A DNA stretch of 63,445 bases, the filler included, from Octopus bimaculoides (lineage: Eukaryota): NCBI RefSeq assembly GCF_001194135.2. It is 7 parts of 6 records of this genome, joined end to end, with 100 filler letters (N's around TTAATTAATTAA, not from the genome) between each part and the next. Parts side by side here need not be neighbours in the genome. Positions count along the whole stretch, not along the records: positions 34,653 to 50,586 come from NC_068997.1; 6 more parts are not named here. The stretch is one strand, 5' to 3'. Below, piece after piece: positions 10,940 to 50,586 of this stretch. Position 1 is the stretch's first letter, and the number at the start of each line of letters is the position of its first letter. Made by a program: the position numbers and the translations under genes. The notes under the pieces were generated by a model. The model searched no databases, was not told where the DNA came from, and was given only the letters and a program-made list of their open reading frames with translations.

Positions 10940-11310
10940 AATGGCCCAGTGGTTAGGGCAGCAGACTCGCGGTTATAAGATCGCGGTTTCGATTCCCAGA
11001 CCGGGCGTTGTGAATGTTTATTGAGCGAAAACACCTAAAGCTCCATGAGGCTCCGGCAGGGGATGGTGGCGACCCTTGCTGTACTCTTCCACCACAACTT
11101 TCTCTCACTCTTACTTCCTGTTTCTGTTGTGCCTGTAATTCAAAGGGTCAGCCTTGTCACACTCTGTCACGCTGAATATCCCCGAGGACTACGTTAAGGG
11201 TACATGTATCTGTGGAGTGCTCATTTGCACGTTAATTTCACGAGAAGGCTGTTCCGTTGATCGGATCAACTGGAACCCTCGACGTCGTAAGCGACGGAGT
11301 GCCAACAACA
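10940..11310 (+). mobile_element. SINE family A
   Basis: Close match to 39198-39583. Confidence 0.85.
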
Positions 11311-11421: not shown

Positions 11422-12252
11422 TAGGGTTTCAAATTTTGGCACAAGGCCAGCAATTTCGGTGGTGAGAGACAAGTCGATTACGTCGACCCCAATGTTACAC
11501 CGATGCTTACGTCATCGACCCCACAAGAATAAAAGGCAAAATCGACCTCGGCCGAATCTGTGTAGGTGTTAATATTGATTTTAAATTTTAGTACAAGGCC
11601 AGCAGTTTCGGGGGATGGGGTACATCAAGTAAACCGCCCCCAGTACTCAACTGATATTTATTTTATCAACAATGAAAGGATGAAAGGCAAAATCTACCTC
11701 AGAACGTAAAAACGGACGAAATACCGCTAAGTATTTTGTCCGGCATGCTAACGATTCTTATTTCTTTATTGCTCACAAGGAGCTAAACATAGAGAGGACA
11801 GACAAGGATAGACAAAGGGATTAAATCGATTACATCAACTTCAGTGCGTAACTGGTACTTATTTAATCGACCCCGAAAGGATGAAAGGCAAAGTCGACCT
11901 CGGCGGAATTCGAACTCAGAACGTCACGGAAGACGAAATACCACTAAGCATTTCGCGCGGCGTGCTAACGATTCTGCCAGATCGCCACCTTGATGTGTAG
12001 TAATTAATATATCATTTTAAATTTTGTCCACACGGGCAGCCTGGGGGAGGTGGGGATGAGTCAATTACATCGACCGCAGTGCGTAACTGGTACTTATTTA
12101 ATCGACCTCGAAAGGATGAAAAGCAAAGTCGACCTCGGCGGAATTCGAACTCAGAACGTAGCGACGGATGAAATGCCGTTAATTATTTCGTCCAGGGTGC
12201 TATGGTGCAAAGTATTTCGCCCGGCGTGCTAACGATTCTGCCAGCTCACAGT
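11422..12252 (-). mobile_element. Cluster of about four SINE family B copies, same orientation
   Basis: Units at about 11425-11555, 11580-11760, 11815-11990 and 12015-12250. Confidence 0.8.
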
Positions 12253-34652: not shown

Positions 34653-35880
34653 TAGAAGTTCATGTTGGTATTATGCCTAGGGTGCCATATATTTGGTTTT
34701 GTACATAGTGTTGTTCTAGAGAATGTTTAAGAAACCATAAGAAAATTATGAGTTTGTTTTAAAATTTGAGATTACATAGACAGTATTTTACGTAGGATAT
34801 GGGCAGTTCCCATGAGCATTATCTTTTGAATTTCCGCCATTTTGGGGTTTCATGGTATCTGAGCTAGGTAGCAATCAGCCCTTTTTGCTATCATTCCTAG
34901 GGCACCTATGACAACAGGTATTGTTTTAGTTTTCAGATTCCACATTTTGCTAATTTCTATTTCAAGATCTTTATACTTGCTCAGTTTTTGGTAGGTCTTG
35001 ACAGATACGTTAATTTCGATTGGTACAGTCATATCAATGAGGAGGCATGATATTTGTCTGAAGACTTTCAACATGATGTCTGGCCTATTTGCATCTATCT
35101 TTCTGTCAGTTTGAAGAGTGAAATTTCAGAGGAGTGAGATGTGATCATTTTCAAGCACTGGAGTTGGTTTGTGTTCCACCAGTTTTTATCATGGGGCAAG
35201 TCCAGGTTTTTGCAAATTACCCAGTGAATATATATATTGTGCAGCTCTATCATACCTGTTGAGATACTCTGTAGGCGCAAGAAGACTGCACTTGGAGACA
35301 ACATGGTCAATGGTTTCATTTTGTTGTTGACATAAACGGTATGTTGGGAAGCTACCGTTCTTTATTATGTTCCTTGTAGGTAGGCAATGGCCTTGGGCTG
35401 CTATGATAAACCCTTCTGTTTCAGATTTTAAGCCAGAGGCCATTAGCTATTGATGGGTAAGGGCTTTGTCAACATCGGCATTATTCGCTCTCTTCGGGTA
35501 TTTGCCATTGAGAAGCTTTTCTTGCCATTTATCAGTCAGAATATCTAAGGCAGAAGTTTTAGCACGGGTTTTCATGTGCTTAGCTTTTTCTGCGCTTGTT
35601 TCTCGTATGTCGAATTCCGGAATTTGTTGTATTTGGAATTCACTTAGATATTCCTTAGCCTGTTTTCGCGATAATCTATTCAACGTTTCTGCCTCTTCTT
35701 TGATCCGATTCAAAATAGGCGCACTATGTATGATAATCGGAAATCGCCAGATATTCGTAGTAGGAAATATGTTCTTTTCATTCAAATCCATTTTCTGTAG
35801 CAGCTCTAACCTATTTAGACAGACTTCCTTCGCATTTCCTTTCATCTTCTCACTGGCTATGTCACAAGAAAGCAATATAC
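34653..35880 (-). mobile_element. R4/Dong-like non-LTR retrotransposon 3' fragment (CCHC finger plus restriction-like endonuclease)
   Basis: GLKSETEGFIIAAQ, RLCQQQNETIDHVVSKC, ANRPDI, CLLIDMTVP and KLSKYKDLEIEISKMWNLKTKTIPVVIGALG. Frameshifted. Confidence 0.85.
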
Positions 35881-36003
35881 TCGTACATACATATACTCAT
35901 ATATGAATATAGCGAATAAATGTCAACTACTTGAAAAACAATCTTTCTCACTCACTCACGAATAATTACCGTCTTAGAAAATAATGTGAGAATATTTTGG
36001 TAT

Positions 36004-36079
36004 TTTAACATACTAGACCACTATAGACTTTAACATATTGGACTACTACGGAACTTTAACATACTAGACAACTACATAG
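36004..36079. repeat. Three diverged 25-26 bp tandem units
   Basis: tttaacatactagaccactatagac / tttaacatattggactactacggaac / tttaacatactagacaactacatag. Confidence 0.85.
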
Positions 36080-36469
36080 TTTGTAAATAACCCTGATATA
36101 ATTTTCCAAGAGAAATAACGAAATATTTTTGGAAATAAAAAGACCTAATGTTTAGTAGAAGCAAACTGAAAAGAATGACACCGGCACAGCAAGTGAAGTA
36201 CACCCACAAATAATCTATCAAGGTGGACATAGGCATGTATCATACAACAGTAGTAATAAGGTGTGTATAAAGCCTAACAAAACATTTGTTAACCATAAAC
36301 TTTTTTGATAATGCGAAACATACTCGTCCGTTATGAACAATTATGTTAACCATGAAATTATAATTTTTGTTACGGTTTCATTATCAATTTTGTAATTGCT
36401 CTTAATCATTTTCCAATATGGATTTATTATTGTTCTTTTTTTTTACTTTTCTTCAACTTGATGACACAG

Positions 36470-36703
36470 AGAAATGTCCAATCAATGTATTTTACGGCGG
36501 TATGTTTAGGGATAATGAGGTGATGTCCAAATACAAGATGACAACATACGTTGAGTGTCTGAAAAATTGTGGGAAAAGTACTAAATGCTACTCTACTAAC
36601 TACGACGTGAGCACAGCGGCATGTTACTTAATTGCCAGAAATTCTACTGGCATCGCTATCAGACGTCATTACACGAACTGGATAGGCACTGAAGTCGATA
36701 GAG
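36470..36703 (+). CDS. PAN/apple-domain exon A1 (phase 1-1, 234 nt)
   Basis: Acceptor acacag, donor gtaaga. Reads EKCPINVFYGG...YVECLKNCGKSTKCYSTNYDVSTAACYL...NWIGTEVDR, with C-x3-C-x5-C-x11-C-Y-L PAN spacing and an NST sequon. Paralog at 49432. Confidence 0.85.
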
Positions 36704-36720
36704 GTAAGAAAATTTTTTAG

Positions 36721-36769
<49 letters not shown>

Positions 36770-36770
36770 T

Positions 36771-37020
36771 TTTAAAAAATAACGTTGACCACTAACGTGG
36801 ACAATTAATGTGCTAGAAATAGATCACATCTTGTGTCTATTAAGACCTAAATTGTTCTCAACATGAAATATAGCAGCATACCAAAACGTGAGCGGGCAAG
36901 ACATTTTGGTATGCTGCTATATTTCATGTTGAGAACAATTTAGGTCTTAATAGACACAAGATGTGATCTATTTCTAGTACATTAATTGTCCACGTTAGTG
37001 GTCAACGTTATCTTTTTAAA
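36771..37020. mobile_element. MITE/foldback element with ~116-bp inverted arms and a 17-bp spacer
   Basis: 36771-36886 is the reverse complement of 36904-37020 apart from one mismatch and one indel; TTTAAA at both ends. Confidence 0.85.
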
Positions 37021-37078
37021 ATGTACCTTAATCCCCTGAGATTGCAGATACTATTTCTGAATCTCTTTGATTCTTTAG

Positions 37079-37095
37079 ATGTGCTGGCCTCCTGA
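37079..37095 (+). CDS. Possible short terminal exon after A1 (DVLAS*)
   Basis: Strong pyrimidine tract tttctgaatctctttgattctttag; phase 1 compatible; TGA at 37093-37095. Confidence 0.3.
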
Positions 37096-37584
37096 TAATT
37101 AATCGATATTAATTAATATATGATTAATTACCAGATTTTATAATAATATATATATATATATATATGCCTGTCTGTTTGTCTGTTTATCTGCCTTCCTGTA
37201 TGTCCTTGTATACATACATACATACATACATACATATCTTTTTTTGTAACGTTCGTTCTCGAAGCACATTGTATAAAGCTATGAATAATACTATGTAATT
37301 ATTGGTTTCCAAACCCCATTGGACAGAACGAGTCCAAGGTTAACCGTGTGACTCAAAGCTCATCTCTTATAGATAAATTCGCCTCGAGAGTCAATGTTTC
37401 AAGTAAGAAATCTTTCACGTATTCTCGATTGTTTATGAAATTTTTATGACGAAAATAACGAAGCAGAAAAAGCAAAAACACTTTCTTGGTGTTTGCAGTT
37501 GCAAATGTACGATGAGTAGGGGAACAAACGTTTAAAATACATGAAGTTTTAAAGTTCTTTTTTAAAACACCTCCTTCTGTTATA

Positions 37585-38570
37585 TTGAAATATCTGTTTA
37601 AGACGACCTTCGGACCGGGACCTATGGACAACTTCCAGAGATCCCTGGCCTGGCAGTGTTATCGAGAAGCACTACCCGTTCGGGATAAGCTCTACAGGCA
37701 TGGCTCGAGAAACATGGGGCCGACCTGTCCGAGATGCCGACAGAGCGACGAAACCGTTCTGCACGCACTCGTACAGTGTCCCACCATTTCCGAGCTGTGG
37801 GCTTACGTCGAACAACTGCTATCGCGTGTGGGACGAGTCGGTCTATCAGCCGAGTCTATCGTGAATATTGTCGCGCCTCCTTCCTTTAAACGGGAAGGAA
37901 GAGCTATTTTCATCGTACTTGTGGCTNNNNNNNNNNNNNNNNNNNNNNNNNNNNNNNNNNNNNNNNNNNNNNNNNNNNNNNNNNNNNNNNNNNNNNNNNN
38001 NNNNNNNNNNNNNNNNNNNNNNNNNNNNNNNNNNNNNNNNNNNNNNNNNNNNNNNNNNNNNNNNNNNNNNNNNNNNNNNNNNNNNNNNNNNNNNNNNNNN
38101 NNNNNNNNNNNNNNNNNNNNNNNNNNNNNNNNNNNNNNNNNNNNNNNNNNNNNNNNNNNNNNNNNNNNNNNNNNNNNNNNNNNNNNNNNNNNNNNNNNNN
38201 NNNNNNNNNNNNNNNNNNNNNNNNNNNNNNNNNNNNNNNNNNNNNNNNNNNNNNNNNNNNNNNNNNNNNNNNNNNNNNNNNNNNNNNNNNNNNNNNNNNN
38301 NNNNNNNNNNNNNNNNNNNNNNNNNNNNNNNNNNNNNNNNNNNNNNNNNNNNNNNNNNNNNNNNNNNNNNNNNNNNNNNNNNNNNNNNNNNNNNNNNNNN
38401 NNNNNNNNNNNNNNNNNNNNNNNCCTTTTGATCGAACTACCCCCTTTTCCTTCCTACGATCCCTTTTGATCGACCCCCCCCTTTTTTTTTCTTTCCCCCT
38501 CCCAAAAAGAAAAGCTCTACATTGTATTTGTCCCATCTTCGTTGAGCCCTGTGTGGCTAATAAAAGAAAT
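37585..38570 (+). mobile_element. Tx1/L1-clade LINE 3' end (zinc-binding domain, N gap, 3' UTR)
   Basis: WQCYREALPVRDKL...CPRCRQSDETVLHALVQC; after the gap a pyrimidine-rich UTR ends in aataaaagaaa. Confidence 0.8.
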
Positions 38571-39197
38571 GTAACTGATACAAAACTATTTGGAAAAATC
38601 CCGACCGAAACGGAGAATTTCCAACTTATACGGAATAGCTATTCCGAAGGTCCGCTCTTTTCAGTAAAGTAATTTTAAAGTGTTCATCAAATTGGAATAG
38701 TACAAAATGGCGAAGTATATAGAAAGAACAAGAAAGAAAATAAGTTTCGATTTACTGTTTTTCAGTGTTCTGATATCTTTTTATCGTTTATATTTTACTT
38801 ATTTTAGTCATTTGACTGCGGCCATGTTGGGGCACCATCAAAAATGTCGGCTCTGTTATACCCACATCATCAGCGGCTGTCCCAAAATGTCTCCAGGATA
38901 CTACCTACTGATATGCTGGGGCAACTGCCCCCTTTTGCCATCCCACTACTATAAATCTACTTATGTATATAGTGGATGAGAAGATAAGCAGCGGATTAGT
39001 GCTCGGACTAATCGGATTCTGAAGCTCATTATTCCTTATCAGAGTAAGGCTGTCCAGAAGTATAAGAGTTGTCTATAAGTTAAAGCGGACAGTTATAGAG
39101 GAAGGATAAAATGCTGCTAATAGTAAGGAGGCTTGCCACTCGGTTTGCGCAATTGTGCAAACTGGTTTGGGGAAACACACACATATATCTAAGAATA

Positions 39198-39583
39198 GTT
39201 GCAATGGCCCAGTGGTTAGGGCAGCGGACTCGCGGTCATAGAATCGCGGTTTCGATTCTCAGACCGGGCGTTGTGAGTGTTTATTCAGCGAAAACACCTA
39301 AAAGCTCCACGAGGCTCCGGCAGGGGATGGTGGCGAACACTGCTGTACTCTTTCACCACAACTTTCTCTCACTCTTACTTCCTGCTTCTGTTGTGCCTGT
39401 AGTTCAAAGGGTCAGCCTTGTCACACTGTGTCACGCTGATTATCCCCGAGAACTACGTTGAGGGTAAACGTGTCTGTGGAGTGCTCAGCCACTTGCACGT
39501 TAATTTCACGAGCAGGCTGTTCCGTTGGTCGGATCAACTGGAACCCTCGACGTCGTAAGCGACGGAGTGCCAACAACAACAAC
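39198..39583 (+). mobile_element. SINE family A, full length with 11-bp TSD
   Basis: ATCTAAGAATA at 39187-39197 and 39584-39594; (CAA)n tail. Confidence 0.9.
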
Positions 39584-39870
39584 ATCTAAGAATACTTAAA
39601 GATAGCAATTGTTTTTTGAGTTTCTTATTGTTAATGGCAATACATACCAGGCAGACCCGCACACTCACACACACACACACACACACACACTAACACACAC
39701 ACATATACACGCATACACACGCATACATGCATGCACGTACATACTCATAAACGCAGGTATTCATATCGAGAAACGGTGAGAGGAAGGGAGAGCTAGAACG
39801 AGAGAAAGGGATATTTCAATGCTTGTTTCACCTTCTCTGTCCTCGTGATATTTCTGCATGTGTCCACTAG

Positions 39871-39968
39871 CAACCTTTGAAAAACTGACCGCTAACGGCT
39901 CAATCTTAACACACCCAGAGGGCGGCCAGCAGGTCTACAGATACCGCTTCTTATTCCACGTTCAGCAA
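39871..39968 (+). CDS. Candidate exon of unknown domain in the PAN cluster
   Basis: cactag acceptor; open phase-1 frame TFEKLTANGSILTHPEGGQQVYRYRFLFHVQQ; gtaatg donor in phase 0, which does not match the next candidate exon's main acceptor. Confidence 0.3.
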
Positions 39969-40023
39969 GTAATGTGTGTGCATATATATCCTTATGTGTG
40001 TGTGTGAGTTTCTTTCTTTCTTA

Positions 40024-40116
<93 letters not shown>

Positions 40117-40177
40117 GGTGTATGTATATTATGTGTTAATACACAAATAATAGTAAAATAATGTCGTTGTTTTTCAG

Positions 40178-40267
40178 ACAAGTTTGACAACGACCCAAAT
40201 GTTTTGAGGGATTTAAATGAAAAAGGGTGTGATCTGAAATTTCTCTATGTTCTCAACGTCATAGATG
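40178..40267 (+). CDS. Candidate phase 1-1 exon (90 nt) in the PAN cluster
   Basis: gttgtttttcag acceptor; KFDNDPNVLRDLNEKGCDLKFLYVLNVID; gtaaag donor; the other two frames hit stops. Confidence 0.4.
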
Positions 40268-40735
40268 GTAAAGTATAACTTTCAGTAACTTATTCATGTA
40301 GCATATTTGTTTTAGTAGTGCTTAACTAAAGATATCAATGAGAGCAATTTAAGTCTCTAAATCCTAAGAATGTGAACGCGATCAAATCCTTTTTCTCTCA
40401 AACAGGTCAACTAATATTTGCTCTGTTGTAATCAGATTGCTATGGTTTGCTCCTTCTACTATTCTTTTATTTGTAGTATCGCCCTTCGTCTCCGATTGAT
40501 CGCTGGCATTTTATTTTAATATAATTTTTGTCAATTTAAAAAATTTCATTTTTTCTGATTCAGTCCTTAATCTCTTCAATCTCGGATAAAAATAGTAAAA
40601 CAAGTTTTTAATTTTTATTTCTTATTTATACCAAAATACAGGTAAATAACACGTATTGAGTAAATGTTTAAAGAATTCAATAATCAATATGCTTAATCTT
40701 TAGCAAGGATAAATGAAAATTTTGTTAACATTAAG

Positions 40736-41110
40736 TTGTTGTTGTTGGCACTCCGTCGCTTACGACGTCGAGGGTTCCAGTTGATCCGACCAACGGAACA
40801 GCCTGCTCGTGAAATTAACGTGCAAGTGGCTGAGCACTCCACAGACACGTGTACCCTTAACGTAGTTCTCGGGGATATTCAGCGTGACACAGTGTGACAA
40901 GGCTGACCCTTTGAATTACAAGCACAACAGAAACAGGAAGTAAGAGTGAGAGAAAGAGTACAGCAGGGTTCGCAACCATCCCCTACTGGAGCCTCGTGGA
41001 GTTTTAGGTGTTTTCGCTGAATAAACACTCACAACGCCCGATCTGGGAATCGAAACCTCGATTCTATGACCGCGAGTCTGCTGCCCTAAACACTAGGCCA
41101 TTGCGCCTCC
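40736..41110 (-). mobile_element. SINE family A
   Basis: Reverse complement of the 39198 copy. Confidence 0.85.
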
Positions 41111-41252
41111 ACTTGTATATATGTATATATAAACACGTATATAAACATATATATATGGATGCATACGTACATGCACTGCACGTGTACCTACATATATAAA
41201 AAGATATTCGTGGATGCATGTATGGGCTCTCGCACACGCCTCCGTATGTATG

Positions 41253-41286
<34 letters not shown>

Positions 41287-41406
41287 TGTATGTGCACGTT
41301 TAAATCAGCCGTAGAATTGGTATAGTAACATTCACAAATGTAAAAAAAACACAATTTCATAGCGCTTTCCATTCCTCATATTGTTTTACCTTTTATATTT
41401 CCACAG

Positions 41407-41603
41407 AGAGAACGTATCCTAGCGATGATACTATGCGGAGGGGAGTTCTTTTCTCCAAGCGGCAGAACACATCAGGTAACATTAAGATGACACCAGCCAT
41501 CGATGTTGATGGCATTTTCGATTGTGCAATCAGATGTATGACATCTTCGGAATGTCTTGGTTTCAAATACGAGTCACAATGTCAAATGGCAGTCAAATAT
41601 TGA
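41407..41603 (+). CDS. Terminal PAN/apple-domain exon C (absent from the ORF track)
   Basis: ttttccacag acceptor, phase 1. Reads RTYPSDDTMRRGVLFSKRQNTSGNIKMTPAIDVDGIFDCAIRCMTSSECLGFKYESQCQMAVKY*, with C-x3-C-x5-C-x-G-F-x-Y spacing. Confidence 0.72.
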
Positions 41604-41930
41604 AGTTCAAGAGAATTCTGTAAAACCTGTTCTTCACAAAAACATACAAGGAGAATATATTTTTGTCTTTCTTTTTTTGTGTTGCAGACATCTTGCGGAT
41701 ATCTGTGACGTTTTCGCTTTTCGAATGATATCCTACGCTGTCCATAACTAGTTTTGGAAATGTATGTTTCCTGATAAATCTAGTATTAGTTATGCTTTTT
41801 GAAATAACATCATCGTTACAGTGGTGTTTGTATATTGCAGCCATAAAAAAAAATATAGAAGAACCATGCCATAATGATTAACATTTATTGTGAAATCTAG
41901 TAGTGTTCAATTGCACAAATTTGTTTATAG

Positions 41931-41984
<54 letters not shown>

Positions 41985-42434
41985 TAGTGAAGATTTCTCA
42001 CAATTGTCTTATGACAATGTAAATGAGACTCTGGGCAACAGTTTTGTGTATATTTTTCATCATCAATAAAATAATAATGCTCTCTGTTATTGGTATTCGA
42101 GTGCTATTTTTCTCCACGTTGTNNNNNNNNNNNNNNNNNNNNNNNNNNNNNNNNNNNNNNNNNNNNNNNNNNNNNNNNNNNNNNNNNNNNNNNNNNNNNN
42201 NNNNNNNNNNNNNNNNNNNNNNNNNNNNNNNNNNNNNNNNNNNNNNNNNNNNNNNNNNNNNNNNNNNNNNNNNNNNNNNNNNNNNNNNNNNNNNNNNNNN
42301 NNNNNNNNNNNNNNNNNNNNNNNNNNNNNNNNNNNNNNNNNNNNNNNNNNNNNNNNATATATATATATATATACATCTAAGTCTGTATGAAAACATGTTC
42401 TTCTTTCCTACGGATATATCATCCAAGCGTACAC

Positions 42435-42510
<76 letters not shown>

Positions 42511-43409
42511 CAGGGGTCTTCCACACACTTTTCATGTATTAAATTCACTCACAAGCTCATTGTTCGGCACATGGATAGTGGGGTAGAAAAACTTGCTAAA
42601 GATCTCTCGCACTATACACAAAACCCCAAACGACATGATTGCAACTACGGCTGAATTACAATTTCCTTGATATTAGATTTAGCGTGTAAAGATAGGGGAC
42701 GACCGAACTGGTCAGTGAAAAGCATACATAAGACAATGACACAAAACAATATGAATTGGAAATTAAGTCCTGACTTGGAATCTGAATTGCGTGATAAAGT
42801 GTCATAAAATGGCTGACATTGATACTGACGTGTTTGTAGAACGACATTTTGCTTATTTATTGTTATATAATACAAAGTAAAGCTGCGTGAAACTACATGA
42901 TTTTATGTTATGTACTTTTGACACGTAAATTTTCAATAGCATAACTTTCTCTTCAAGGATTCCTTTCAAGCAAGTACGATGTTGAGAAGTATATGAAGGG
43001 GGTGGGGCTGAAATGTGGTTTGCTTCTTAATTTCTTTTGTTTTTAATTGATTAAAATAGCCAATGGTGATAATGGCAAATCAATCCAGTAAACCTTAAGA
43101 AATGAATCTGGCTTCATATGTAAACACACAGACACAGACACAAGCACACACAGACACACACAAACATAGAAACATACATACATACACACATACATACACA
43201 CATATATGCATACACACATGCATGCATACATACATAGATACATATATACATACAAACATACATGCATACATTAATAACTACCTACCTACCTACCTGCCTG
43301 CCTACATGCATACATGCATACATACGTACATATATATTTATTATTTCTATGCATGTATGTATCTATGCATGCACGTATATATATATATATATATATATAT
43401 ATACGTTCG

Positions 43410-43455
<46 letters not shown>

Positions 43456-43652
43456 TGTTTCCATGCATTATCTACCGCCATTTCTTGTTATATCACCAGT
43501 TCCCTAGTTACGCTGCGTTCTGCCGCTCCACCCTCACTCATTCTATCTCGCACACTCGCTCTCCCTTTCTCTCCCCACTCTCTCTAAATATAATATACAA
43601 TTTAATCTCCACTTCGAAGTAGATCTTAGTAATTTATTGGAACCAACAAGTC

Positions 43653-43680
43653 ATGTGGAAACATCTTCTATTCTGCTTTG
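43653..43680 (+). CDS. First coding exon, signal peptide part 1 (MWKHLLFCF)
   Basis: ATG, 28 nt, then a perfect G|GTAAGT donor in phase 1. Confidence 0.6.
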
Positions 43681-44384
43681 GTAAGTTCACTTTGTCTTTG
43701 TCATTTCTGTTGGTATTGATGCTATTCTTGTACAATATTTCATCAGCTTGGGCCCCGCAGACCTGACTATCGCGTGATTTATTTTATTTGCGTGACATAG
43801 TCTATCTAGGAGCACATTATTCCATGTAACCTTCATGTTTTTAAAGACGACAATAGGCCCCATAATAATGGCAGATTTAGTTGCTCTTTCCGGCAGGTTA
43901 AAACACTTTGTAAATAAATCCTTAGATGAATCGATTAACATTAGGCTGAAATTGGCCCAACTATACTCAGGTCGGGTTTAATATAGCAGGCCTAAAATAA
44001 AAGACCTTGCATCTATGACCATTGCATCTGTCCTTGGTCAGTTATAAGGTGTCAAGAATTTCGTCATCGAATCGACTCTTTTCAGTTAAGATTGCAGAAT
44101 AGAATTTCGGGTACGTTTGACTTCTGTTTCCTCTCACCTCAACTGTATGGCTTAAACGTAATGTCGACCTTGGTGACGTTTGAACTGAAGACACTGAAAA
44201 CGGAAACAGAAATCCTAAGGTATTCTCTCTTGCAGTAAATCACCAGTATTGTGTAGCCCCAAACCCAACCCTCATTGGATACTCACTTATGCTCAAATGC
44301 ATTCCAACCGTGATCATTCTGTATATTTTCTAAGAATACTAAACCCGCAACTACATTATTCAATAAATTTATTTTTCTAAAACA

Positions 44385-44690
44385 GGCATATGGCGTAGTG
44401 GTTGAAAGCGCGGGCTACTAACTCCAAGATTCCGAGTTCGATTCCGGACAGTGATCTGAATAATAATAATAATAATAATAACAACAACGATGATGATGAT
44501 GATGATAAAGATGATGATGATGATGATGACATCGAAAACTACCTTAGGAATGAGGACCCAGGTTCGAAATTTCCCCAAGACACCTGATGAAGGCTGGAGG
44601 GTATATCAGCCGAAAAATTGTGTTAACAACAAACAAATGTAAATAATGTAAATAATGTACATGATTCCTCATCTCTTAAATATAGAACTG
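44385..44690 (+). mobile_element. tRNA-headed SINE family C with AAT/GAT spacer and hammerhead-bearing tail
   Basis: A box TGGCGTAGTGG (44391-44401), B box GTTCGATTCC (44436-44445), and CTGATGA-A-GGCTG...CAGCC-GAAA at 44584-44615. Confidence 0.7.
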
Positions 44691-45447
44691 TATTGTTGTT
44701 GTTGTTGTTTAGCCCCAGGCTCGTCCTGACTTAGAAAACGCATCATCAAAGTTGTTTCAGTCATGGAACTCTCATCTTGTGGTCATCTAAAAAAACGTTT
44801 TCTTGTGTATCCCTCCGTTTTTAAGAAGGTAGAGATTGAATTAATACAATTTGGCTGCTGTTTGTAACACAGCGACTGATCATGTAGAATCTCCCGCGTT
44901 GATGTCGACTAGTTGCCATAGAAATATTTTATTCCATTTCTTCTTCTTCTTCTTCTTCTTCTTCTTCTTCTTCTTCTTCTTCTTCTTCTTCTTCTTCTTC
45001 TTCTTCTTCTCCGTCTTCTTCTCCATTTATTTCTTTTTAATTATTTTTATTTCATCTTGTTGAAAATACTTCTTGATAAGAACGATGAAAGAAAAAGCGA
45101 TGCTTACTTTCAGTGTGTTTAACGAAAAATGGATGAGAACTGCGAGACTGGCGAAACTGCAGAGATCTTCCCCTGAACTTGCTCTTCTCAGTTGAAGGAA
45201 TTGGGAGAGCGAACAGTGGCAGAGTAATCTGAGGCTAGCCTTCTCCCATATTAGGAAATATTTTTCGTTTATTTGTTGAACAGCTTTCTGAGAATTTCTT
45301 TTGATCCTTTATTTTTCTTAGCCTCATTTCACACGATGCAAACCCGGCAGTTGTTTTGTGTTGTATGTTCGTATTTTGTACTTGTATTGTCCTAAATGAA
45401 ACCCCCCTCCTTTTCATCATCATCATTATTATTATTATTATTATTAC

Positions 45448-45507
<60 letters not shown>

Positions 45508-46379
45508 GTATGCTGCGGAGTACGTCAGGCGTGTTTTTGAACGCACGAAATAATTCCTCGTTAATTTCATTGCGTACACCCGTTTGAAATTGTCTTTTGG
45601 TTGGAATTTTCACCCCAAGTGGTAACTGAAAATTTTAGGAACCCGTTACTGGGTCAGTTGTGGCTGTTTTGCCCCTTAAGGGGAAAATTTCGGCCCTCCT
45701 GAAAATTGCTCGAGAGGCATTAAGAACAATAATTTTATTAAGACGGCGGTATCTTCCTTAAAACTTTTCAAAGGCAAATCAATTCCTCCCCCAGCCTTCT
45801 TATAGCTGAAGACTTCCCTCCGCTTCCTTCTCTTACCAAAAATTGTGCAGGAGAAGGGGAGGAGACAAAAGAGATGGAAACGGACAGAAGGAAGAGGTCA
45901 TTAGTGAAAAAATGTCTATGACAACAATAACGGCAGCATCAGAAGTGGTGGTAGTGGAAGTGACGAAAGCGGTGGGGATAGTGGCAGGATAGATAGCAAA
46001 TATGGAAGCAGTAACGACAGTAGCAGTAACAGTAGCAGAGAAGCAATTCAGGCAGTGGCGGCAGGAGCGACGATAGCGGTGGTAACGGAGTGCTTCGAGG
46101 CAGCGGTGGTAGTGGCGATGGTAGCAACAATGAAAGTGGCTTTCCCATCCCCACCAAGAGTAGTAAGACGTTTTTTGCCGGCGTCTCAAAAGAGCATTTT
46201 ACACTCTCCCTAGGAAATCAAACCTCTAACAAAAGCTATCACCACCAGCACAACCAACACCACCACAACCCCACATCACCTCCAAAAGAATGCTTTTGGA
46301 AGAACTGCTAAACTCTCAGACCCCGAATTCTGTGTTAGTGAGGAGAGCAAATAAAGATGTCATGGCCCTCATAACTCGA

Positions 46380-46650
46380 AATAAAGAGATTGAGAGAGAG
46401 GGAGCAATAAAGACACCAAAACGCTTAAATTGCCGGAAGAGCTTTTGTTAGTGCGTGTGCCACCAACAACGTACAAAAACATTGGGGACGGAGCAGCCAG
46501 GTTTCTTCCGATGTTTGGAGATTTTTCCTGAGACATCTCGCTCTTTAGTTCTAGCAGGCGATCGGAACACCATCCTGGATGCACGCCTGGATAGTGTGGG
46601 GTTAGCTGATAGGAGAGGGGGAGTGCAAAGGCGTCACAAACCAGGTGCCT
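46380..46650 (+). mobile_element. Tx1/L1 endonuclease fragment
   Basis: LEIFPETSRSLVLAGDRNTILDARLDSVG is a degenerate GDxN motif. Confidence 0.6.
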
Positions 46651-46843
46651 AGCTGCAGGCCCACGAACTTCACCTAATTAATCTTTGATCCTGTCACCGC
46701 TTCGTACTCCCTTGAAGTAGAGCCGAGAGTAAAACCAACTCGAAAACTAGAAGTCACAGCTCTACTGTTGTAGTGAAGGAGCTTGTAGATTAATACTAAT
46801 TTTATTTCTTTATCATAGTACATATATCATCTTCTCATTTCAG

Positions 46844-46876
46844 TATTGAATATATTGCTGAAGGCCCAGGGAACAG
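46844..46876 (+). CDS. Second coding exon, signal peptide part 2 (VLNILLKAQGT)
   Basis: cttctcatttcag acceptor, 33 nt, phase 1-1, CAG|GTATGT donor; completes the hydrophobic core and an A-x-G cleavage motif. Confidence 0.65.
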
Positions 46877-47074
46877 GTATGTAAGTTGAGANNNNNNNNN
46901 NNNNNNNNNNNNNNNNNNNNNNNNNNNNNNNNNNNNNNNNNNNNNNNNNNNNNNNNNNNNNNNNNNNNNNNNNNNNNNNNNNNNNNNNNNNNNNNNNNNN
47001 NNNNNNNNNNNNNNNNNNNNNNNNNNNNNNNNNNNNNNNNNNNNNNNNNNNNNNNNNNNNNNNNNNNNNNNNNN

Positions 47075-47111
<37 letters not shown>

Positions 47112-47577
47112 AATATATGCACACAGACATCTCAAAAGTAAATATACTCGCCTTTCTTTGTGCAGACACGACTCATTACTACGATGCATCAAAACGGTAA
47201 CATCATTAAATACTGCACAAGGCGTTTGTAAAAATAGTGAATAAAATATTTCAACCTATCAAATGACATTATTTTGTTTGTTGGAAAATAAATCTTATGG
47301 AAATGATGTCGAATATTTACTTTCAAGATGTCTGTGTATTTACGAGTGTTATACCGAAACTCATGCAAATGTAGACATAACGTTTTTATTACCAGTTATA
47401 GGTCGTCCAAATTACATATATTGGTAGAGTAACTATTTTATTTTAGCGATGCTTAAAATACTTGGATATTAGTAACGGAAGTGATATTAATCTTGACCTA
47501 CATTCCGAAATTGGTGCACTCTGGAAACAAACTAAACACATACCGTTGTATAGCGGTTATTATTTCCTAAAATATAT

Positions 47578-47885
47578 TTCGGGGTCGATAAATTAAGTAC
47601 CAATTGTGTACTGGGGTGGGTCTAATCGACTGCTCCCCCCCCCCAAAAAAAAATTTCAAGCCTTGTGCCTGTAATAGAAAAGAAAAGAAACGTTAGCATG
47701 CCGGGCTAAATGCTTAGAGCTATATTTCGTCTGTTCTGGGTTCCCATTCTTCCGAGGTCGACTTTGCCTTACATCCTTTCGGGGGTCGATAAATTAAGTA
47801 TCGGTGAAACACTGGGGTTGATGTAATCGACTTATCGCCTCCCTATAAAAATTGTAAGCCTTGTACCTTTAGTAGAAAGGGTTAT
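47578..47885 (+). mobile_element. One partial and one near-complete SINE family B copy
   Basis: Matches the family unit; ends about 15 nt before the acceptor of exon D. Confidence 0.75.
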
Positions 47886-47902
47886 TTATATTTTTTATGC
47901 AG

Positions 47903-48132
47903 TTGCCGAAGCTAATTTTCCAAGCACAAGTAAGTTCATGAAAGTCAGCAAAACCAGACCTCCTAAATATATCAAGTGGACAGAGAAGAAAATACCTCTC
48001 GAAAATTGTGCAGATACATGTCTTAAAATGCAGACATGTAAATCTTTTACTTACTACAAACAACGATCCCACTGCAGACTGTACGAGACATGGAGCGGCG
48101 AAATCCGAATGGCTCATGCCAGAAAACAGTAA
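47903..48132 (+). CDS. PAN/apple-domain exon D ending in a stop codon
   Basis: ttttttatgcag acceptor, phase 1. Reads AEANFPSTSKFMKVSK...ENCADTCLKMQTCKSFTYYKQRSHCRLYETW...ARKQ*, with C-x3-C-x5-C-x-S-F-x-Y...C-x-L-Y. Confidence 0.8.
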
Positions 48133-48559
48133 ACGGTAAACATTCTTCTTCTTGTTCTTCTTGTTGTTGTTCTTTTCTTCTTCTTCCTCCTCCACCTCCT
48201 CCTCCACCCCTCCTTTACCCCTTCCCCCTCATTTTCCTCCACTTTCTCATCCTCCTACTCCACTCTTTCTCCTCCACTTGCTCTTNNNNNNNNNNNNNNN
48301 NNNNNNNNNNNNNNNNNNNNNNNNNNNNNNNNNNNNNNNNNNNNNNNNNNNNNNNNNNNNNNNNNNNNNNNNNNNNNNNNNNNNNNNNNNNNNNNNNNNN
48401 NNNNNNNNNNNNNNNNNNNNNNNNNNNNNNNNNNNNNNNNNNNNNNNNNNNNNNNNNNNNNNNNNNNNNNNNNNNNACCCTCTGTCTCCTCCTCCTCACC
48501 CTCTGTCTCCTCCTCCTCACCCTCTGTCTCCTCCTCCTCACCCTCTGTCTCCTCCTCCT

Positions 48560-48790
48560 CCTCTGCCGCCTCCCTTCCTCTTTGCATTTCTATTTTCGAC
48601 AATGCCTTCAGGTTTGTGGTCGTACCAATGTTTTGCTCTGTCAAGTCCATACTTGTTGCAAAGTGTCCAATGGACAAGCCTGGCTATATCGCTGTGGCGT
48701 CTCTTATATTCTTTTTGGGCTAGTGGCGTACATTGGCTGGTAATATACTGTACGGTTTCACCGTTTTGTCCACAGTTTCTGCACACCGCT
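48560..48790 (-). mobile_element. R4/Dong-like LINE fragment
   Basis: CRNCGQNGETVQYITSQCTPLAQKEYKRRHSDIARLVHWTLCNKYGL...WYDHKPEGIVEN. Confidence 0.8.
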
Positions 48791-49431
48791 TTCTGCTGTG
48801 TTGTCTATATTATTATTATTGTTATTATTGTTGTTGTTGTTTTTGTTTTTGCTGTTGTTTTTTACCGATGAGTGTGTTAAATAACAAGGCACTAAAAGAG
48901 GATAACTCTCCCCAGACACCACAAAATAAAAGAGTACTAGACAACTAAATAGTTCGTAATAATCCTGACATAATTTTCCAAGACAAATAGGGAAATATTG
49001 CTGGAATTACGAACATAGCAAAACCAAATGTTAAGAACATGCAAACTGTAAAACTAAAGAATTACACAGAACTAATGCAAAATATTTGATATTTAAGAAA
49101 ATAAAAGCATTACTCCAAGTTTTTCAGTTTTCATTATATAACTGGTATGATAAACAACCGCTTATGGTACGTACTCCCACAAATAATCTATCATGGTAAA
49201 CACAGGAATGTACCATAATACAGTAGTAATGTGTGTAAAATAGCCTGTCGAAAATATTTGTTAACCATAAACATTTTTGATAATACGTAACAAACTCGTC
49301 ATATATGAACAAATATATTAACCATGACTTTTTTGATAATGAAACCGTAATTTTGTTACTGTTTCATTATCAATTTATTTTCTTGTATGAATTTATTATT
49401 GTTCTTTTTATTTATTTTTTTGTTGACACAG

Positions 49432-49665
49432 AGACATGTCCCATCAATGTTTTTTACGGTGGTAAGTTTACAAATTCGAAATTTATATCCACACTAAAAC
49501 CGAAATCATACATTGATTGTCTGAAAGCTTGTAGAGACACTACTTCATGCTACTCTACTAACTTCAACGTGAACACAACCACATGTTACTTGAATCCCGA
49601 TAACTCTACTGGCTTCAATATCAGAAGACGATCCAAAAACTGGATATCTACTGAAGTCGACAGAG
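49432..49665 (+). CDS. PAN/apple-domain exon A2 (phase 1-1, 234 nt), paralog of A1
   Basis: acacag acceptor, gtaact donor. Reads ETCPINVFYGG...YIDCLKACRDTTSCYSTNFNVNTTTCYL...NWISTEVDR; 44/78 aa identical to A1; NTT and NST sequons. Confidence 0.85.
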
Positions 49666-49719
49666 GTAACTGAAACATTTTAATCTATCTCAGATAACTT
49701 AGATAATTCAGATTGGTTT

Positions 49720-49764
49720 CGGCCATTATCGGTCATTATCGGCCATTTCGGCCATTATCGGTCC
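49720..49764. repeat. 10-bp minisatellite (cggccattat) x about 4.5
   Basis: Direct reading. Confidence 0.85.
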
Positions 49765-49799
49765 AGACTATGACTAACTCAATAGCACCACCTGGAAAA

Positions 49800-50040
49800 G
49801 TCTTTTAATTAATTATTTCGGGACACCATGGACCACTGAATCAGAGAGTTGCTGTTGGCTGAGACGTAGGTGGTTTGTCCGATATTTGTCCAGGTACCGT
49901 TTGAAAGTTGTGGTGTTTTTTTCTACTTCAATTTCTTTCGGGATTACATTGAAAAGAGCAGGACCATTTGCAGTGAGGAAATTGTGCCGCAATATTCTTA
50001 TGTGATGTGATCTCGACCTTTGTAGGGAACGCATTGCACG
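49800..50040 (-). mobile_element. CR1-type LINE 3' end fragment
   Basis: RHNFLTANGPALFNVIPKEI...FKRYLDKY. Confidence 0.7.
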
Positions 50041-50200
50041 GGGGTGGGGAGGGGGCTAGTATTGGGTGAATTGTAAACATAAGACCGATATCATTTGAAT
50101 AATATTCGTGGAATATTTTCCACTTGGTGCAAATAATATATTGCTCACGGCGGCGTTGCAGTTCTCTGCTTCAGCTATTTAAGTCGAGCCCAATAACCAC

Positions 50201-50269
<69 letters not shown>

Positions 50270-50529
50270 CCTTGAAAATGGTAATTTCAAGGTCATTTGT
50301 TGGTCATACGCAGAAAGAAGACCCAAAGAAATTTCAACAAGTGACATCTTTCTGCTAATGTATATGTTTGTTTCTGTGTATATGCAGACATATACACATA
50401 GGTTCACATATACATACAAGCATACATACATACATACATACGTACATACGCACATACATACATACATACATACATATATTCATACATACGCACATACATA
50501 CATAAGTATGTGTGTGTGTGCGTATGTGT

Positions 50530-50586
<57 letters not shown>

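What the first reader, a model, noticed from the sequence alone, without database searches (positions are those of the whole stretch)
36470..49665. Cluster of four PAN/apple-domain exons joined in one phase: candidate family of small secreted PAN proteins
Seen: four plus-strand exons (36470-36703, 41407-41603, 47903-48132, 49432-49665) share C-x3-C-x5-C-x(8-11)-C spacing, have canonical splice sites and all start in phase 1. Three of the four carry N-glycosylation sequons, and all lie on one segment buried in repeats. One exon is missing from the ORF track. Established: this Cys pattern is the core of PAN/apple modules (plasminogen/HGF N-terminal domain, factor XI and prekallikrein apples), which bind proteins or glycans. 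Inference: a lineage-specific tandem family of small secreted recognition or gland proteins built by exon duplication.
Basis: partly seen in the sequence, partly recalled or inferred. Interest (0 to 1): 0.8.

Follow-up and report, generated by a model that had tools for sequence, protein, structure and literature searches.

The report
Two tandem octopus three-PAN protein genes
The four exons are real, transcribed PAN-domain exons, but they belong to two neighbouring duplicate genes of Octopus bimaculoides, each encoding one roughly 278-residue secreted protein with three PAN-like modules; databases already list both as uncharacterised "apple domain" proteins, so this is an ordinary gene family of unknown function.

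Summary
All four exons carry C-x3-C-x5-C-x(8-11)-C in phase 1. Three pass the Pfam PAN_1 cut-off and the fourth falls just below it. An AlphaFold model matches factor XI/prekallikrein apple domains, apicomplexan PAN lectins and the HGF/plasminogen N domain.

RNA contigs change the interpretation: there are two tandem paralogous genes, not four small ones.
- **Gene A:** 36470-36703, a missed 90-nt exon at 40178-40267, and a terminal exon from 41407 (stop at 41601-41603, then 3'UTR). Its first three exons lie upstream of the piece.
- **Gene B:** missed exons at 43653-43680 (ATG, leader) and 46844-46876, then 47903-48135 and 49432-49665. Its last two exons lie beyond the piece.

Other results:
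- Every coding intron is phase 1.
- An in-frame read-through transcript joins gene A to gene B.
- All four assembly gaps are intronic or intergenic, and spliced RNA bridges each one.
- The window is O. bimaculoides locus LOC106868212 (UniProt A0A0L8HWE2).
- Close relatives are found only in octopods.

Tissue and ligand remain unknown.

The parts
36470..36703 (+). Gene A exon 4 of 6: PAN2 module, 234 nt, phase 1-1, one NST sequon
   Evidence: RNA contigs of X14, X15 and X16 match 36469-36703 exactly and then leave the genome. PAN_1 scores 28.1 bits. The translated sequence is an exact substring of UniProt A0A0L8HWE2.
40178..40267 (+). It encodes DKFDNDPNVLRDLNEKGCDLKFLYVLNVID, the linker plus the first Cys of the third module.
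   Evidence: The 90 nt of the RNA contig between 36703 and 41407 end in TCTATGTTCTCAACGTCATAGAT, which is found only at 40244-40266. The exon has ag/gt boundaries and is 80% identical to O. sinensis P0001 residues 183-212.
41407..41603 (+). Gene A exon 6, coding part: C-terminal half of the third PAN-like module, stop TGA at 41601-41603, one NTS sequon
   Evidence: RNA contigs run from 41406 through the stop without a break. PAN_1 scores 19.2 bits, E=0.0011, below the 21.4 cut-off.
41604..41955 (+). Gene A 3'UTR (minimum extent; the contig stops at a (TG)n run)
   Evidence: X14 contig of 1408 nt is collinear from 41406 to record position 1353 at 41900, which projects to 41955. TG repeat at 41932-41983. 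An AATAAA lies at 42065.
41475..41476 (+). Alternative internal donor (CATCAG|gtaaca) used by the gene A to gene B read-through transcript; phase 1, so the fusion stays in frame
   Evidence: X16 RNA contig joins ...GCAGAACACA(TCAG) to 46844. RefSeq XP_014768861.2 contains the same junction, RQNTS|VLNILLKAQGTV.
43642..43680 (+).
   Evidence: The loose end of the X15 contig, GTCATGTGGAAACATCTTCTATTCTGCTTT, matches 43650-43679. tblastn with the O. sinensis leader also hits here.
46844..46876 (+).
   Evidence: X15 and X16 contigs cover 46843-46876 and continue into TTGCCGAAGC..., which is 47903. Boundaries are tttcag/gtatgt.
47903..48135 (+). Gene B exon 3: PAN1 module. It is 233 nt in this assembly and 252 nt (phase 1-1) in the intact allele.
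   Evidence: RNA contigs cover 47900-48135 with 19 extra nt after 48118 and are spliced directly to 49432. PAN_1 scores 35.4 bits and PAN_2 30.6 bits. With the 19 nt restored, the peptide reads ...HASIRGYYQKTVNE, matching O. sinensis ...HASVRGYYQKAVNE.
48118..48119 (+). Site of a segregating 19-bp deletion (CATCTATACGAGGATACTA absent from the window). It shifts the frame and creates the TAA at 48130-48132.
   Evidence: DNA contigs of X6, X7, X8 and X12 carry the 19 nt. DNA contigs of X4 and X9 lack it, like the window. RNA contigs of X14, X15 and X16 carry it.
49432..49665 (+). Gene B exon 4: PAN2 module, 234 nt, phase 1-1, NTT and NST sequons
   Evidence: RNA contigs cover 49431-49665 and then continue into ACAAGCTTGACAACGACCC..., a paralogue of the 90-nt exon that is not in the piece. 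PAN_1 scores 32.7 bits. The exon is 91% identical to O. sinensis P0001.
39181..39583 (.). Left copy of an interspersed repeat, inverted relative to 40735-41124; the pair brackets the 90-nt exon
   Evidence: the repeat finder I1 (222 nt, 97% complementary) and I2 (123 nt, 89%). Further copies occur elsewhere in L001.
40735..41124 (.). Right copy of the same repeat

Best explanation
The piece holds most of two head-to-tail paralogous genes of Octopus bimaculoides.

Gene structure. Each gene has six coding exons:
- an ATG exon contributing 9 residues;
- a 33-nt exon that completes a cleavable signal peptide;
- a 252-255-nt PAN1 exon;
- a 234-nt PAN2 exon;
- a 90-nt linker exon carrying the first Cys of module 3;
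- a terminal exon with the rest of a short third PAN-like module.

Every intron is phase 1.

Product. The product is a roughly 278-aa precursor. The mature gene A protein is about 30 kDa, has 14 Cys and several N-glycan sites, and has no membrane anchor. It is a soluble secreted protein built only of PAN modules.

Likely mechanism (inferred). By analogy with every characterised PAN/apple module, it most likely binds an extracellular ligand, either a carbohydrate/glycosaminoglycan or a protein. Three modules in one chain would give multivalent binding.

Local peculiarities (shown):
1. The reference allele of gene B carries a 19-bp frameshift deletion that truncates it after PAN1. The intact allele also segregates, and it is the one seen in RNA.
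2. Because all splice phases are identical, a read-through transcript from an internal donor in gene A's last exon to gene B's exon 2 stays in frame.
For: - **Exon-exon joints from RNA contigs:** 36703>40178>41407 for gene A and 43680>46844>47903>49432 for gene B.
- **Stop and 3'UTR of gene A:**
- **Separate ATG and leader for gene B:**. The leader has a basic n-region (MWKH), an 11-residue hydrophobic core and A-x-G before the cut; this is read from the sequence. The AF2 model gives pLDDT below 50 for residues 1-22.
- **Orthologue:** O. sinensis LOC118766662 (277 aa) has exactly this layout.
- **Identity with database entries:** the gene A peptide is an exact substring of UniProt A0A0L8HWE2. 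The locus is found in GCA_001194135.2, with gene A's upstream exons and gene B's terminal exon in the flanks.
- **PAN identity:** PAN_1 at 58-66 bits on the assembled proteins. AF2 gives pLDDT 81-93 over PAN1 and PAN2. Foldseek returns FXI/prekallikrein apple domains at E=5e-7, MIC4, SML-2, the HGF N domain (rmsd 2.9 A over 84 residues) and plasminogen PAN (1.8 A over 78). The best PDB sequence hits are SML-2, MIC4 and HGF.
- **Single-copy DNA depth:**
- **Restricted expression:** only 7 RNA runs hold the gene A 3' exon, and two other runs of the same 2015 study hold none of it.
Against: - No ligand, tissue or phenotype is known. The binding function rests only on family analogy.
- The third module is weak: it is below the Pfam cut-off when scored alone, its AF2 model has pLDDT 62, and its fold search finds nothing significant.
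- RefSeq models the locus as one conjoined gene with a different N-terminus that lacks a leader.
- The RNA evidence consists of assembled contigs, not reads, and the runs' kind is only guessed ('RNA?').
- Signal-peptide cleavage was judged by eye, not by a predictor.
Confidence: 0.85

Rival explanations
1. The locus is a single gene encoding one longer multi-PAN protein, as in RefSeq LOC106868212 (391 aa, and 471 aa in the older model). The 'gene A stop' and 'gene B start' would then be only alternative ends.
For: An X16 RNA contig joins 41475 to 46844 in frame. RefSeq models XP_014768861.2 and .1 use that junction. An O. vulgaris model likewise fuses an upstream paralogue to the gene B orthologue. 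Octopus also has giant proteins built of repeated PAN1-PAN2 units plus a further Cys-rich module that looks sushi/CCP-like by eye (not tested).
Against: - The dominant gene A contigs in four runs read through 41475 to the stop and at least 350 nt of 3'UTR, at depth 14-37. The conjoined contig has depth 4.5.
- Gene B has its own ATG exon with a signal peptide, spliced to the same acceptor.
- The O. sinensis orthologue is modelled as a stand-alone 277-aa protein starting at that Met.
- A fusion would bury a signal peptide in the middle of the protein.
Confidence: 0.1
2. Four independent small genes each encode a single-PAN secreted protein.
For: On the deletion allele, gene B would make a 95-aa leader-plus-PAN1 product, which is literally a small secreted PAN protein.
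Against: The exons are directly spliced to one another in RNA contigs. Only one ATG/leader exon per gene exists. Exons 36470 and 49432 have no start codon or leader of their own.
Confidence: 0.02
3. The exons are dead relics or cargo of the surrounding repeats and do not form a functional gene.
For: The piece is full of simple repeats and retroelement fragments (zf-RVT at 37585-37926). The reference allele of gene B is frameshifted.
Against: - The exons are at single-copy depth while the flanks are at 1e4-4e5.
- The exons are correctly spliced and expressed.
- Gene A has an open reading frame.
- The intact gene B allele is present in DNA and RNA.
- The architecture is conserved in O. sinensis, O. 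vulgaris and Argonauta.
Confidence: 0.02

Closest known systems
Octopus bimaculoides LOC106868212 / UniProt A0A0L8HWE2 and A0A0L8HWE5 ('Apple domain-containing protein', automatic annotation)
   Same: These entries are the same locus. The gene A peptide is an exact substring of A0A0L8HWE2, and the piece equals CM046617.1 of GCA_001194135.2 at L001 13575-29508.
   Different: - The database models disagree with the RNA.
- RefSeq fuses gene A to gene B and stops at the deletion-allele stop codon.
- A0A0L8HWE5 carries a repeat-derived false N-terminus.
- No model gives gene B as a stand-alone gene or includes its 90-nt exon, which sits in an assembly gap.
Octopus sinensis LOC118766662 isoform X2 (277 aa)
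   Same: It is the orthologue of gene B: leader, PAN1, PAN2, 30-aa linker and a short PAN3. Identity is 91% in PAN2 and 77% in PAN1.
   Different: It comes from another species and has one extra Cys in PAN1. It has no known function either.
Factor XI / plasma prekallikrein apple domains
   Same: They are the best structural match, with several PAN/apple modules in a row (Foldseek E=5e-7 over about 275 columns). They share the core C-x3-C-x5-C motif.
   Different: - Apple domains have a third disulfide joining their first and last Cys. Here PAN1 has 4 Cys, and PAN2 and PAN3 have 5 with no C-terminal partner.
- There are three modules, not four.
- There is no protease domain.
- Sequence identity is about 15%.
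HGF / plasminogen N-terminal (PAN_1) domain
   Same: The Pfam family matches. The single-module superposition is good: 1.7-3.0 A over 76-87 residues. The gene B modules are basic (pI 9.1-9.6), like the heparin-binding HGF N domain.
   Different: No kringles or protease domain follow. Heparin binding has not been tested.
Apicomplexan PAN/apple lectins (Sarcocystis muris SML-2, Toxoplasma MIC4)
   Same: They are the best sequence match in the PDB (SML-2, E=4e-4). They are also small secreted proteins made only of tandem PAN modules.
   Different: The organisms are unrelated and identity is only 11-14%. Conservation of the galactose-binding site was not assessed.
Octopus giant multi-PAN proteins (e.g. 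O. sinensis LOC118764742, 2643 aa)
   Same: They share the PAN1-'YYQ'-PAN2 two-module unit, at 25-26% identity with up to 13 matched stretches.
   Different: In the giant proteins the unit is repeated many times and alternates with further Cys-rich modules that look like sushi/CCP by eye (not tested). They have no PAN3 tail.

Membership tests
PAN/apple superfamily (Pfam PAN_1 PF00024 and clan) | Match to the family HMM above the curated cut-off | tested here: met
   Exon peptides score 28.1, 35.4 and 32.7 bits against the 21.4 cut-off. The assembled proteins score 38-66 bits with two stretches. Exon 41407 alone scores 19.2 bits, just below the cut-off.
PAN/apple superfamily (Pfam PAN_1 PF00024 and clan) | Four core cysteines spaced C-x3-C-x5-C-x(8-11)-C | tested here: met
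   The motif is present in all four exons. It is also present in every full-length family member aligned (all but one, P0015, for PAN2's first core Cys); the column the tool reports as strictly invariant across all nine rows is the C-x5-C pair of PAN2, and the four PAN3 core Cys are invariant in a separate seven-sequence alignment. Shuffles give 0.02 matches.
PAN/apple superfamily (Pfam PAN_1 PF00024 and clan) | Fold: a helix packed on an antiparallel sheet with a hairpin loop | tested here: met
   Met for PAN1 and PAN2. AF2 gives pLDDT 81-93, and Foldseek returns FXI, PK, MIC4, SML-2, HGF N and plasminogen PAN at E from 5e-7 to 1e-3.
PAN/apple superfamily (Pfam PAN_1 PF00024 and clan) | The same fold for the third module (exon 40178 plus exon 41407) | tested here: inconclusive
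   The stand-alone AF2 model has pLDDT 62, though the strand/helix/hairpin order fits. Foldseek finds nothing with E below 1; SML-2 and MIC4 appear only at E=4-9.
Apple domain in the strict sense (FXI/prekallikrein type) | A third disulfide linking the first and last Cys of a roughly 90-residue module (six Cys per module) | tested here: not met
   Cys counts per module are 4 (PAN1), 5 (PAN2) and 5 (PAN3, including the linker exon). No C-terminal partner Cys exists. Disulfide pairing itself could not be read from the model.
Plasminogen/HGF family | PAN N-domain followed by kringles and a serine-protease(-like) domain | tested here: not met
   Pfam finds only PAN families in the full proteins.
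Apicomplexan-type PAN lectins | Demonstrated carbohydrate (galactose) binding | not testable with these tools
   This needs recombinant protein and a glycan array. The only evidence here is weak sequence and structure similarity.
Classically secreted soluble proteins | Cleavable N-terminal signal peptide with no transmembrane or GPI signal | tested here: inconclusive
   The leader MWKHLLFCFVLNILLKAQG|TV fits the n/h/c rule and the -3/-1 rule by eye. The protein ends five residues after the last Cys. No signal-peptide predictor was available.

The most novel reading that the evidence does not exclude
The locus may show modular evolution in progress in an octopod-only, tissue-restricted family of secreted recognition proteins. 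Because every intron is phase 1, read-through between tandem paralogues yields in-frame chimeric multi-PAN proteins, which is a possible route to the giant PAN-repeat proteins of octopus. In addition, one paralogue segregates as a functional allele and a truncated allele, the kind of presence/absence variation seen in immune, reproductive or chemosensory recognition genes.
Probability: 0.15. Interest if true: 0.5.

Novelty: new member of a known kind. Interest (0 to 1): 0.3.

Why it matters
The practical value is a corrected annotation. Public models of this locus are wrong in several ways:
- two genes are fused into one;
- one model has a false N-terminus;
- one exon is lost in an assembly gap;
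- a reference-allele frameshift is read as the natural stop.

Biologically, this is a small octopod-restricted family of secreted three-PAN proteins. It has restricted expression, fast-diverging paralogues and a segregating loss-of-function allele. That makes it a reasonable candidate for lineage-specific extracellular recognition (mucus, sucker, gland, egg or immune). No evidence here says which, and the domain type and likely mode of action are conventional.

Tried and rejected
- **Upstream exons of gene A inside the piece:** tblastn found none. They lie upstream in L001, beyond a 1788-N gap.
- **Gene B's 90-nt and terminal exons inside the piece:** absent. The terminal exon is at L001 32130-32324, and the 90-nt exon must sit in the gap at L001 29509-31253.
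- **Newer assembly:** the chromosome-scale assembly did not help with the gaps. It is the same contigs with the same runs of N.
- **O. sinensis locus:** the exact look-up of the O. sinensis protein was not on record.
- **Literature:** five of the six searches (PAN or apple domain with octopus or cephalopod; all locus and accession identifiers; an attempt to find the genome paper) found no paper, and the sixth returned 16 papers, none relevant. The 2015 genome paper is not held.
- **Tissue of expression:** run, sample and study names are coded, so it could not be determined. I considered probing tissue markers such as reflectin through further database searches and dropped the idea as costly and ambiguous.
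- **Stand-alone fold search of the third module:** no significant match.
- **Transposon-cargo and pseudogene readings:** rejected on copy depth, splicing and conservation.

Full report
**Layout of the piece**

The usable piece is 34653-50586 (15,934 nt, 38% G+C) and contains four runs of N. It equals CM046617.1 of the O. bimaculoides assembly GCA_001194135.2 (locus L001 13575-29508; window = L001 + 21078). That assembly is 100% identical block by block and carries the same gaps.

**Checking the observation**

- All four stretches translate without stops in the frame that begins with two bases completing a codon.
- Each holds C-x3-C-x5-C-x11-C; the 41407 exon has x8.
- A regex scan of all six frames finds exactly these four plus five hits in (TG)n-type simple repeats. 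200 shuffles give a mean of 0.02 hits.
- Pfam PAN_1 scores are 28.1, 19.2, 35.4 and 32.7 bits against a curated cut-off of 21.4. Three exons therefore pass and the 41407 exon narrowly fails.

**What the RNA shows**

Seven runs guessed to be RNA hold the gene A 3' exon, and six of them also hold part of the first PAN exon region. Their contigs give the following picture.

*Gene A*
- One contig of about 1.4 kb (X14, X15, X16) matches 36469-36703 exactly.
- It then runs collinearly from 41406 through the TGA at 41601-41603 to at least 41955.
- Exon 41407 is therefore a terminal exon with a 3'UTR, not an internal exon.
- About 534 nt of the contig lie upstream of 36470 and are not in the piece.

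*Gene B*
- A 554-nt contig (X15) starts at about 43642 and contains ATG 43653 (MWKHLLFCF).
- It splices 43680>46844, covers the 33-nt exon 46844-46876, and splices to 47903.
- It covers 47903-48135 with 19 extra bases after 48118, then splices 48135>49432.
- After 49665, contigs continue into a sequence that is a 2-mismatch paralogue of the 90-nt exon and is absent from the piece.

**Gene models**

Both genes have the same six-exon plan.

| Exon | Content | Gene A | Gene B |
|---|---|---|---|
| 1 | ATG plus 9 residues | L001 7216 (outside piece) | 43653-43680 |
| 2 | 33 nt, rest of leader | L001 about 11005-11037 (outside piece) | 46844-46876 |
| 3 | PAN1 | L001 about 11422-11677 (outside piece) | 47903-48135 |
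| 4 | PAN2 | 36470-36703 | 49432-49665 |
| 5 | 90-nt linker | 40178-40267 | in the gap at L001 29509-31253 |
| 6 | terminal | from 41407 | L001 32130-32324 (outside piece) |

- Every intron is phase 1.
- The assembled gene A protein is 278 aa.
- The mature gene A protein is about 30 kDa, with 14 Cys and five sequons.
- The four reader exons are PAN2 of A, the C-terminal part of PAN3 of A, PAN1 of B and PAN2 of B.
- Only the two PAN2 exons are clearly alike, at 43 of 76 residues identical.

**Assembly gaps**

- 37927-38423, 46892-47074 and 48286-48476 lie inside introns. 42123-42356 lies between the genes.
- Each is bridged by a spliced RNA joint that keeps order and strand (36703>40178, 46876>47903, 48135>49432, 41475>46844).
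- No coding sequence is interrupted, and reading frames across the runs of N are meaningless.

**The 19-bp difference**

- With the extra CATCTATACGAGGATACTA, exon 3 of gene B is 252 nt and reads ...HASIRGYYQKTVNE. This matches O. sinensis ...HASVRGYYQKAVNE.
- DNA contigs from X6, X7, X8 and X12 carry the 19 nt. DNA contigs from X4 and X9 lack it, like the reference.
- The deletion is therefore a real segregating allele, not an assembly error. It truncates gene B after PAN1.
- RNA contigs show only the intact allele.
- Caveat: the four carriers belong to one study and may not be independent animals.

**Read-through transcript**

- An X16 contig joins gene A's last exon, at an internal donor (41475|gtaaca), to gene B's exon 2.
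- Both sides are phase 1, so the fusion is in frame.
- RefSeq XP_014768861.2 (391 aa) is built on this junction and ends at the deletion-allele stop.
- I read this as a minor conjoined transcript, for three reasons. Gene A contigs reading through to the stop and UTR have depth 14-37, against 4.5 for the conjoined contig. Gene B has its own leader exon. The O. sinensis orthologue stands alone.

**Identity and relatives**

- The word-index search found one relative, O. sinensis LOC118766662 (277 aa).
- It is the orthologue of gene B: 91% identical in PAN2 and 77% in PAN1.
- An exhaustive HMMER search of 1.84 billion representatives found only 31 proteins at E<=0.001.
- All the close hits that carry a name are octopod: O. 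bimaculoides, O. sinensis, O. vulgaris and Argonauta hians (one, P0008, is an unnamed assembly contig).
- Several of them are 223-279-aa proteins with the same three-module plan. They lie on the same 57-Mb O. bimaculoides and 59-Mb O. sinensis chromosomes.
- Also among the hits are giant octopus proteins made of repeated PAN1-PAN2 units alternating with further Cys-rich modules that look sushi/CCP-like by eye (not tested).
- The next hits are unrelated PAN proteins, for example from Neospora.
- The gene A peptide is an exact substring of UniProt A0A0L8HWE2, 'Apple domain-containing protein'.
- No paper mentions these loci.

**Fold**

- An AF2 model of the O. sinensis protein, built with a nine-sequence alignment, has mean pLDDT 73. 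PAN1 and PAN2 reach 81-93.
- Foldseek against the PDB returns FXI/prekallikrein apple domains (E=5e-7), MIC4, SML-2, the HGF N domain (2.9 A over 84 residues) and plasminogen PAN (1.8 A over 78).
- A profile search of PDB sequences gives SML-2 (E=4e-4), MIC4 and HGF.
- The third module, modelled alone, is of low confidence (pLDDT 62) and has no significant structural match. Its PAN nature rests on the Cys motif, the near-threshold HMM score and the order of its secondary-structure elements.
- None of the modules has the six-Cys pattern of true apple domains.

**How it most likely works**

*Shown*
- Two expressed, spliced genes.
- PAN fold for two modules.
- Octopod restriction.
- Single-copy status.
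- The segregating frameshift allele.
- The read-through transcript.

*Inferred*
- The N-terminal leader is cleaved and the protein is secreted and N-glycosylated.
- Like other PAN modules, the three modules bind an extracellular carbohydrate, glycosaminoglycan or protein. Known examples are heparin for the HGF N domain, galactose for SML-2 and MIC4, and protein partners for the FXI apples.
- Three modules in one chain would give multivalent binding.
- Gene B's modules are strongly basic (pI 9.1-9.6), whereas gene A's PAN1 is acidic (pI 5.2). This suggests the paralogues bind different ligands.
- Expression is restricted: the 3' exon of gene A appears in 7 RNA runs and is absent from two other runs of the same 2015 study that were listed. 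The tissue could not be named because the run labels are coded.

**Verdict**

The finding is real and the domain call is correct, but the gene model was wrong and the locus is already in the databases as an uncharacterised apple-domain protein. It is a new, uncharacterised member of a well-known domain family, of modest interest.

Noticed in passing
window 48118/48119 (gene B exon 3): There is a segregating 19-bp frameshift deletion. The reference and two DNA runs lack CATCTATACGAGGATACTA, while four DNA runs and three RNA runs have it. The reference allele truncates gene B after its first PAN module.
   Followed up: yes
window 41475 > 46844: An in-frame read-through (conjoined) transcript runs from an internal donor in gene A's last exon to gene B's second exon. 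The current RefSeq model of LOC106868212 is built on it.
   Followed up: partly
window 39181-39583 and 40735-41124: Two copies of an interspersed repeat lie in inverted orientation (222 nt at 97% and 123 nt at 89% complementary) and bracket the 90-nt exon 40178-40267. In other animals this arrangement favours exon skipping or back-splicing. More copies occur at L001 6146-6247 and 8511-8633, and one of them was mis-annotated as the N-terminus of UniProt A0A0L8HWE5.
   Followed up: partly
window 37585-37926 (+) and 35189-35443 (-): These are fragments of non-LTR retrotransposon ORFs. The first matches Pfam zf-RVT at 36.6 bits and runs into the assembly gap. The second matches at 19.1 bits, below the cut-off.
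   Followed up: partly
L001 10747-10779 and 11005-11037 (outside the piece): Gene A has two tandem copies of its 33-nt second exon with near-identical splice-site contexts (tttcag...gtatgtaagtt). Different database models use one or the other. Only the downstream copy continues a hydrophobic leader.
   Followed up: no
window 47577-47850 and 36704-37240: These intronic stretches show extremely high RNA and DNA contig depth (1e3-2e5), so they are high-copy repeats that are transcribed somewhere in the genome. The repeat at 47577-47850 sits immediately upstream of the acceptor at 47903.
   Followed up: no
run X26 (organism B): A run from a second species holds 26% of the 31-mers of gene A's last exon and 3'UTR. 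A very close relative of O. bimaculoides therefore carries this gene nearly unchanged.
   Followed up: no
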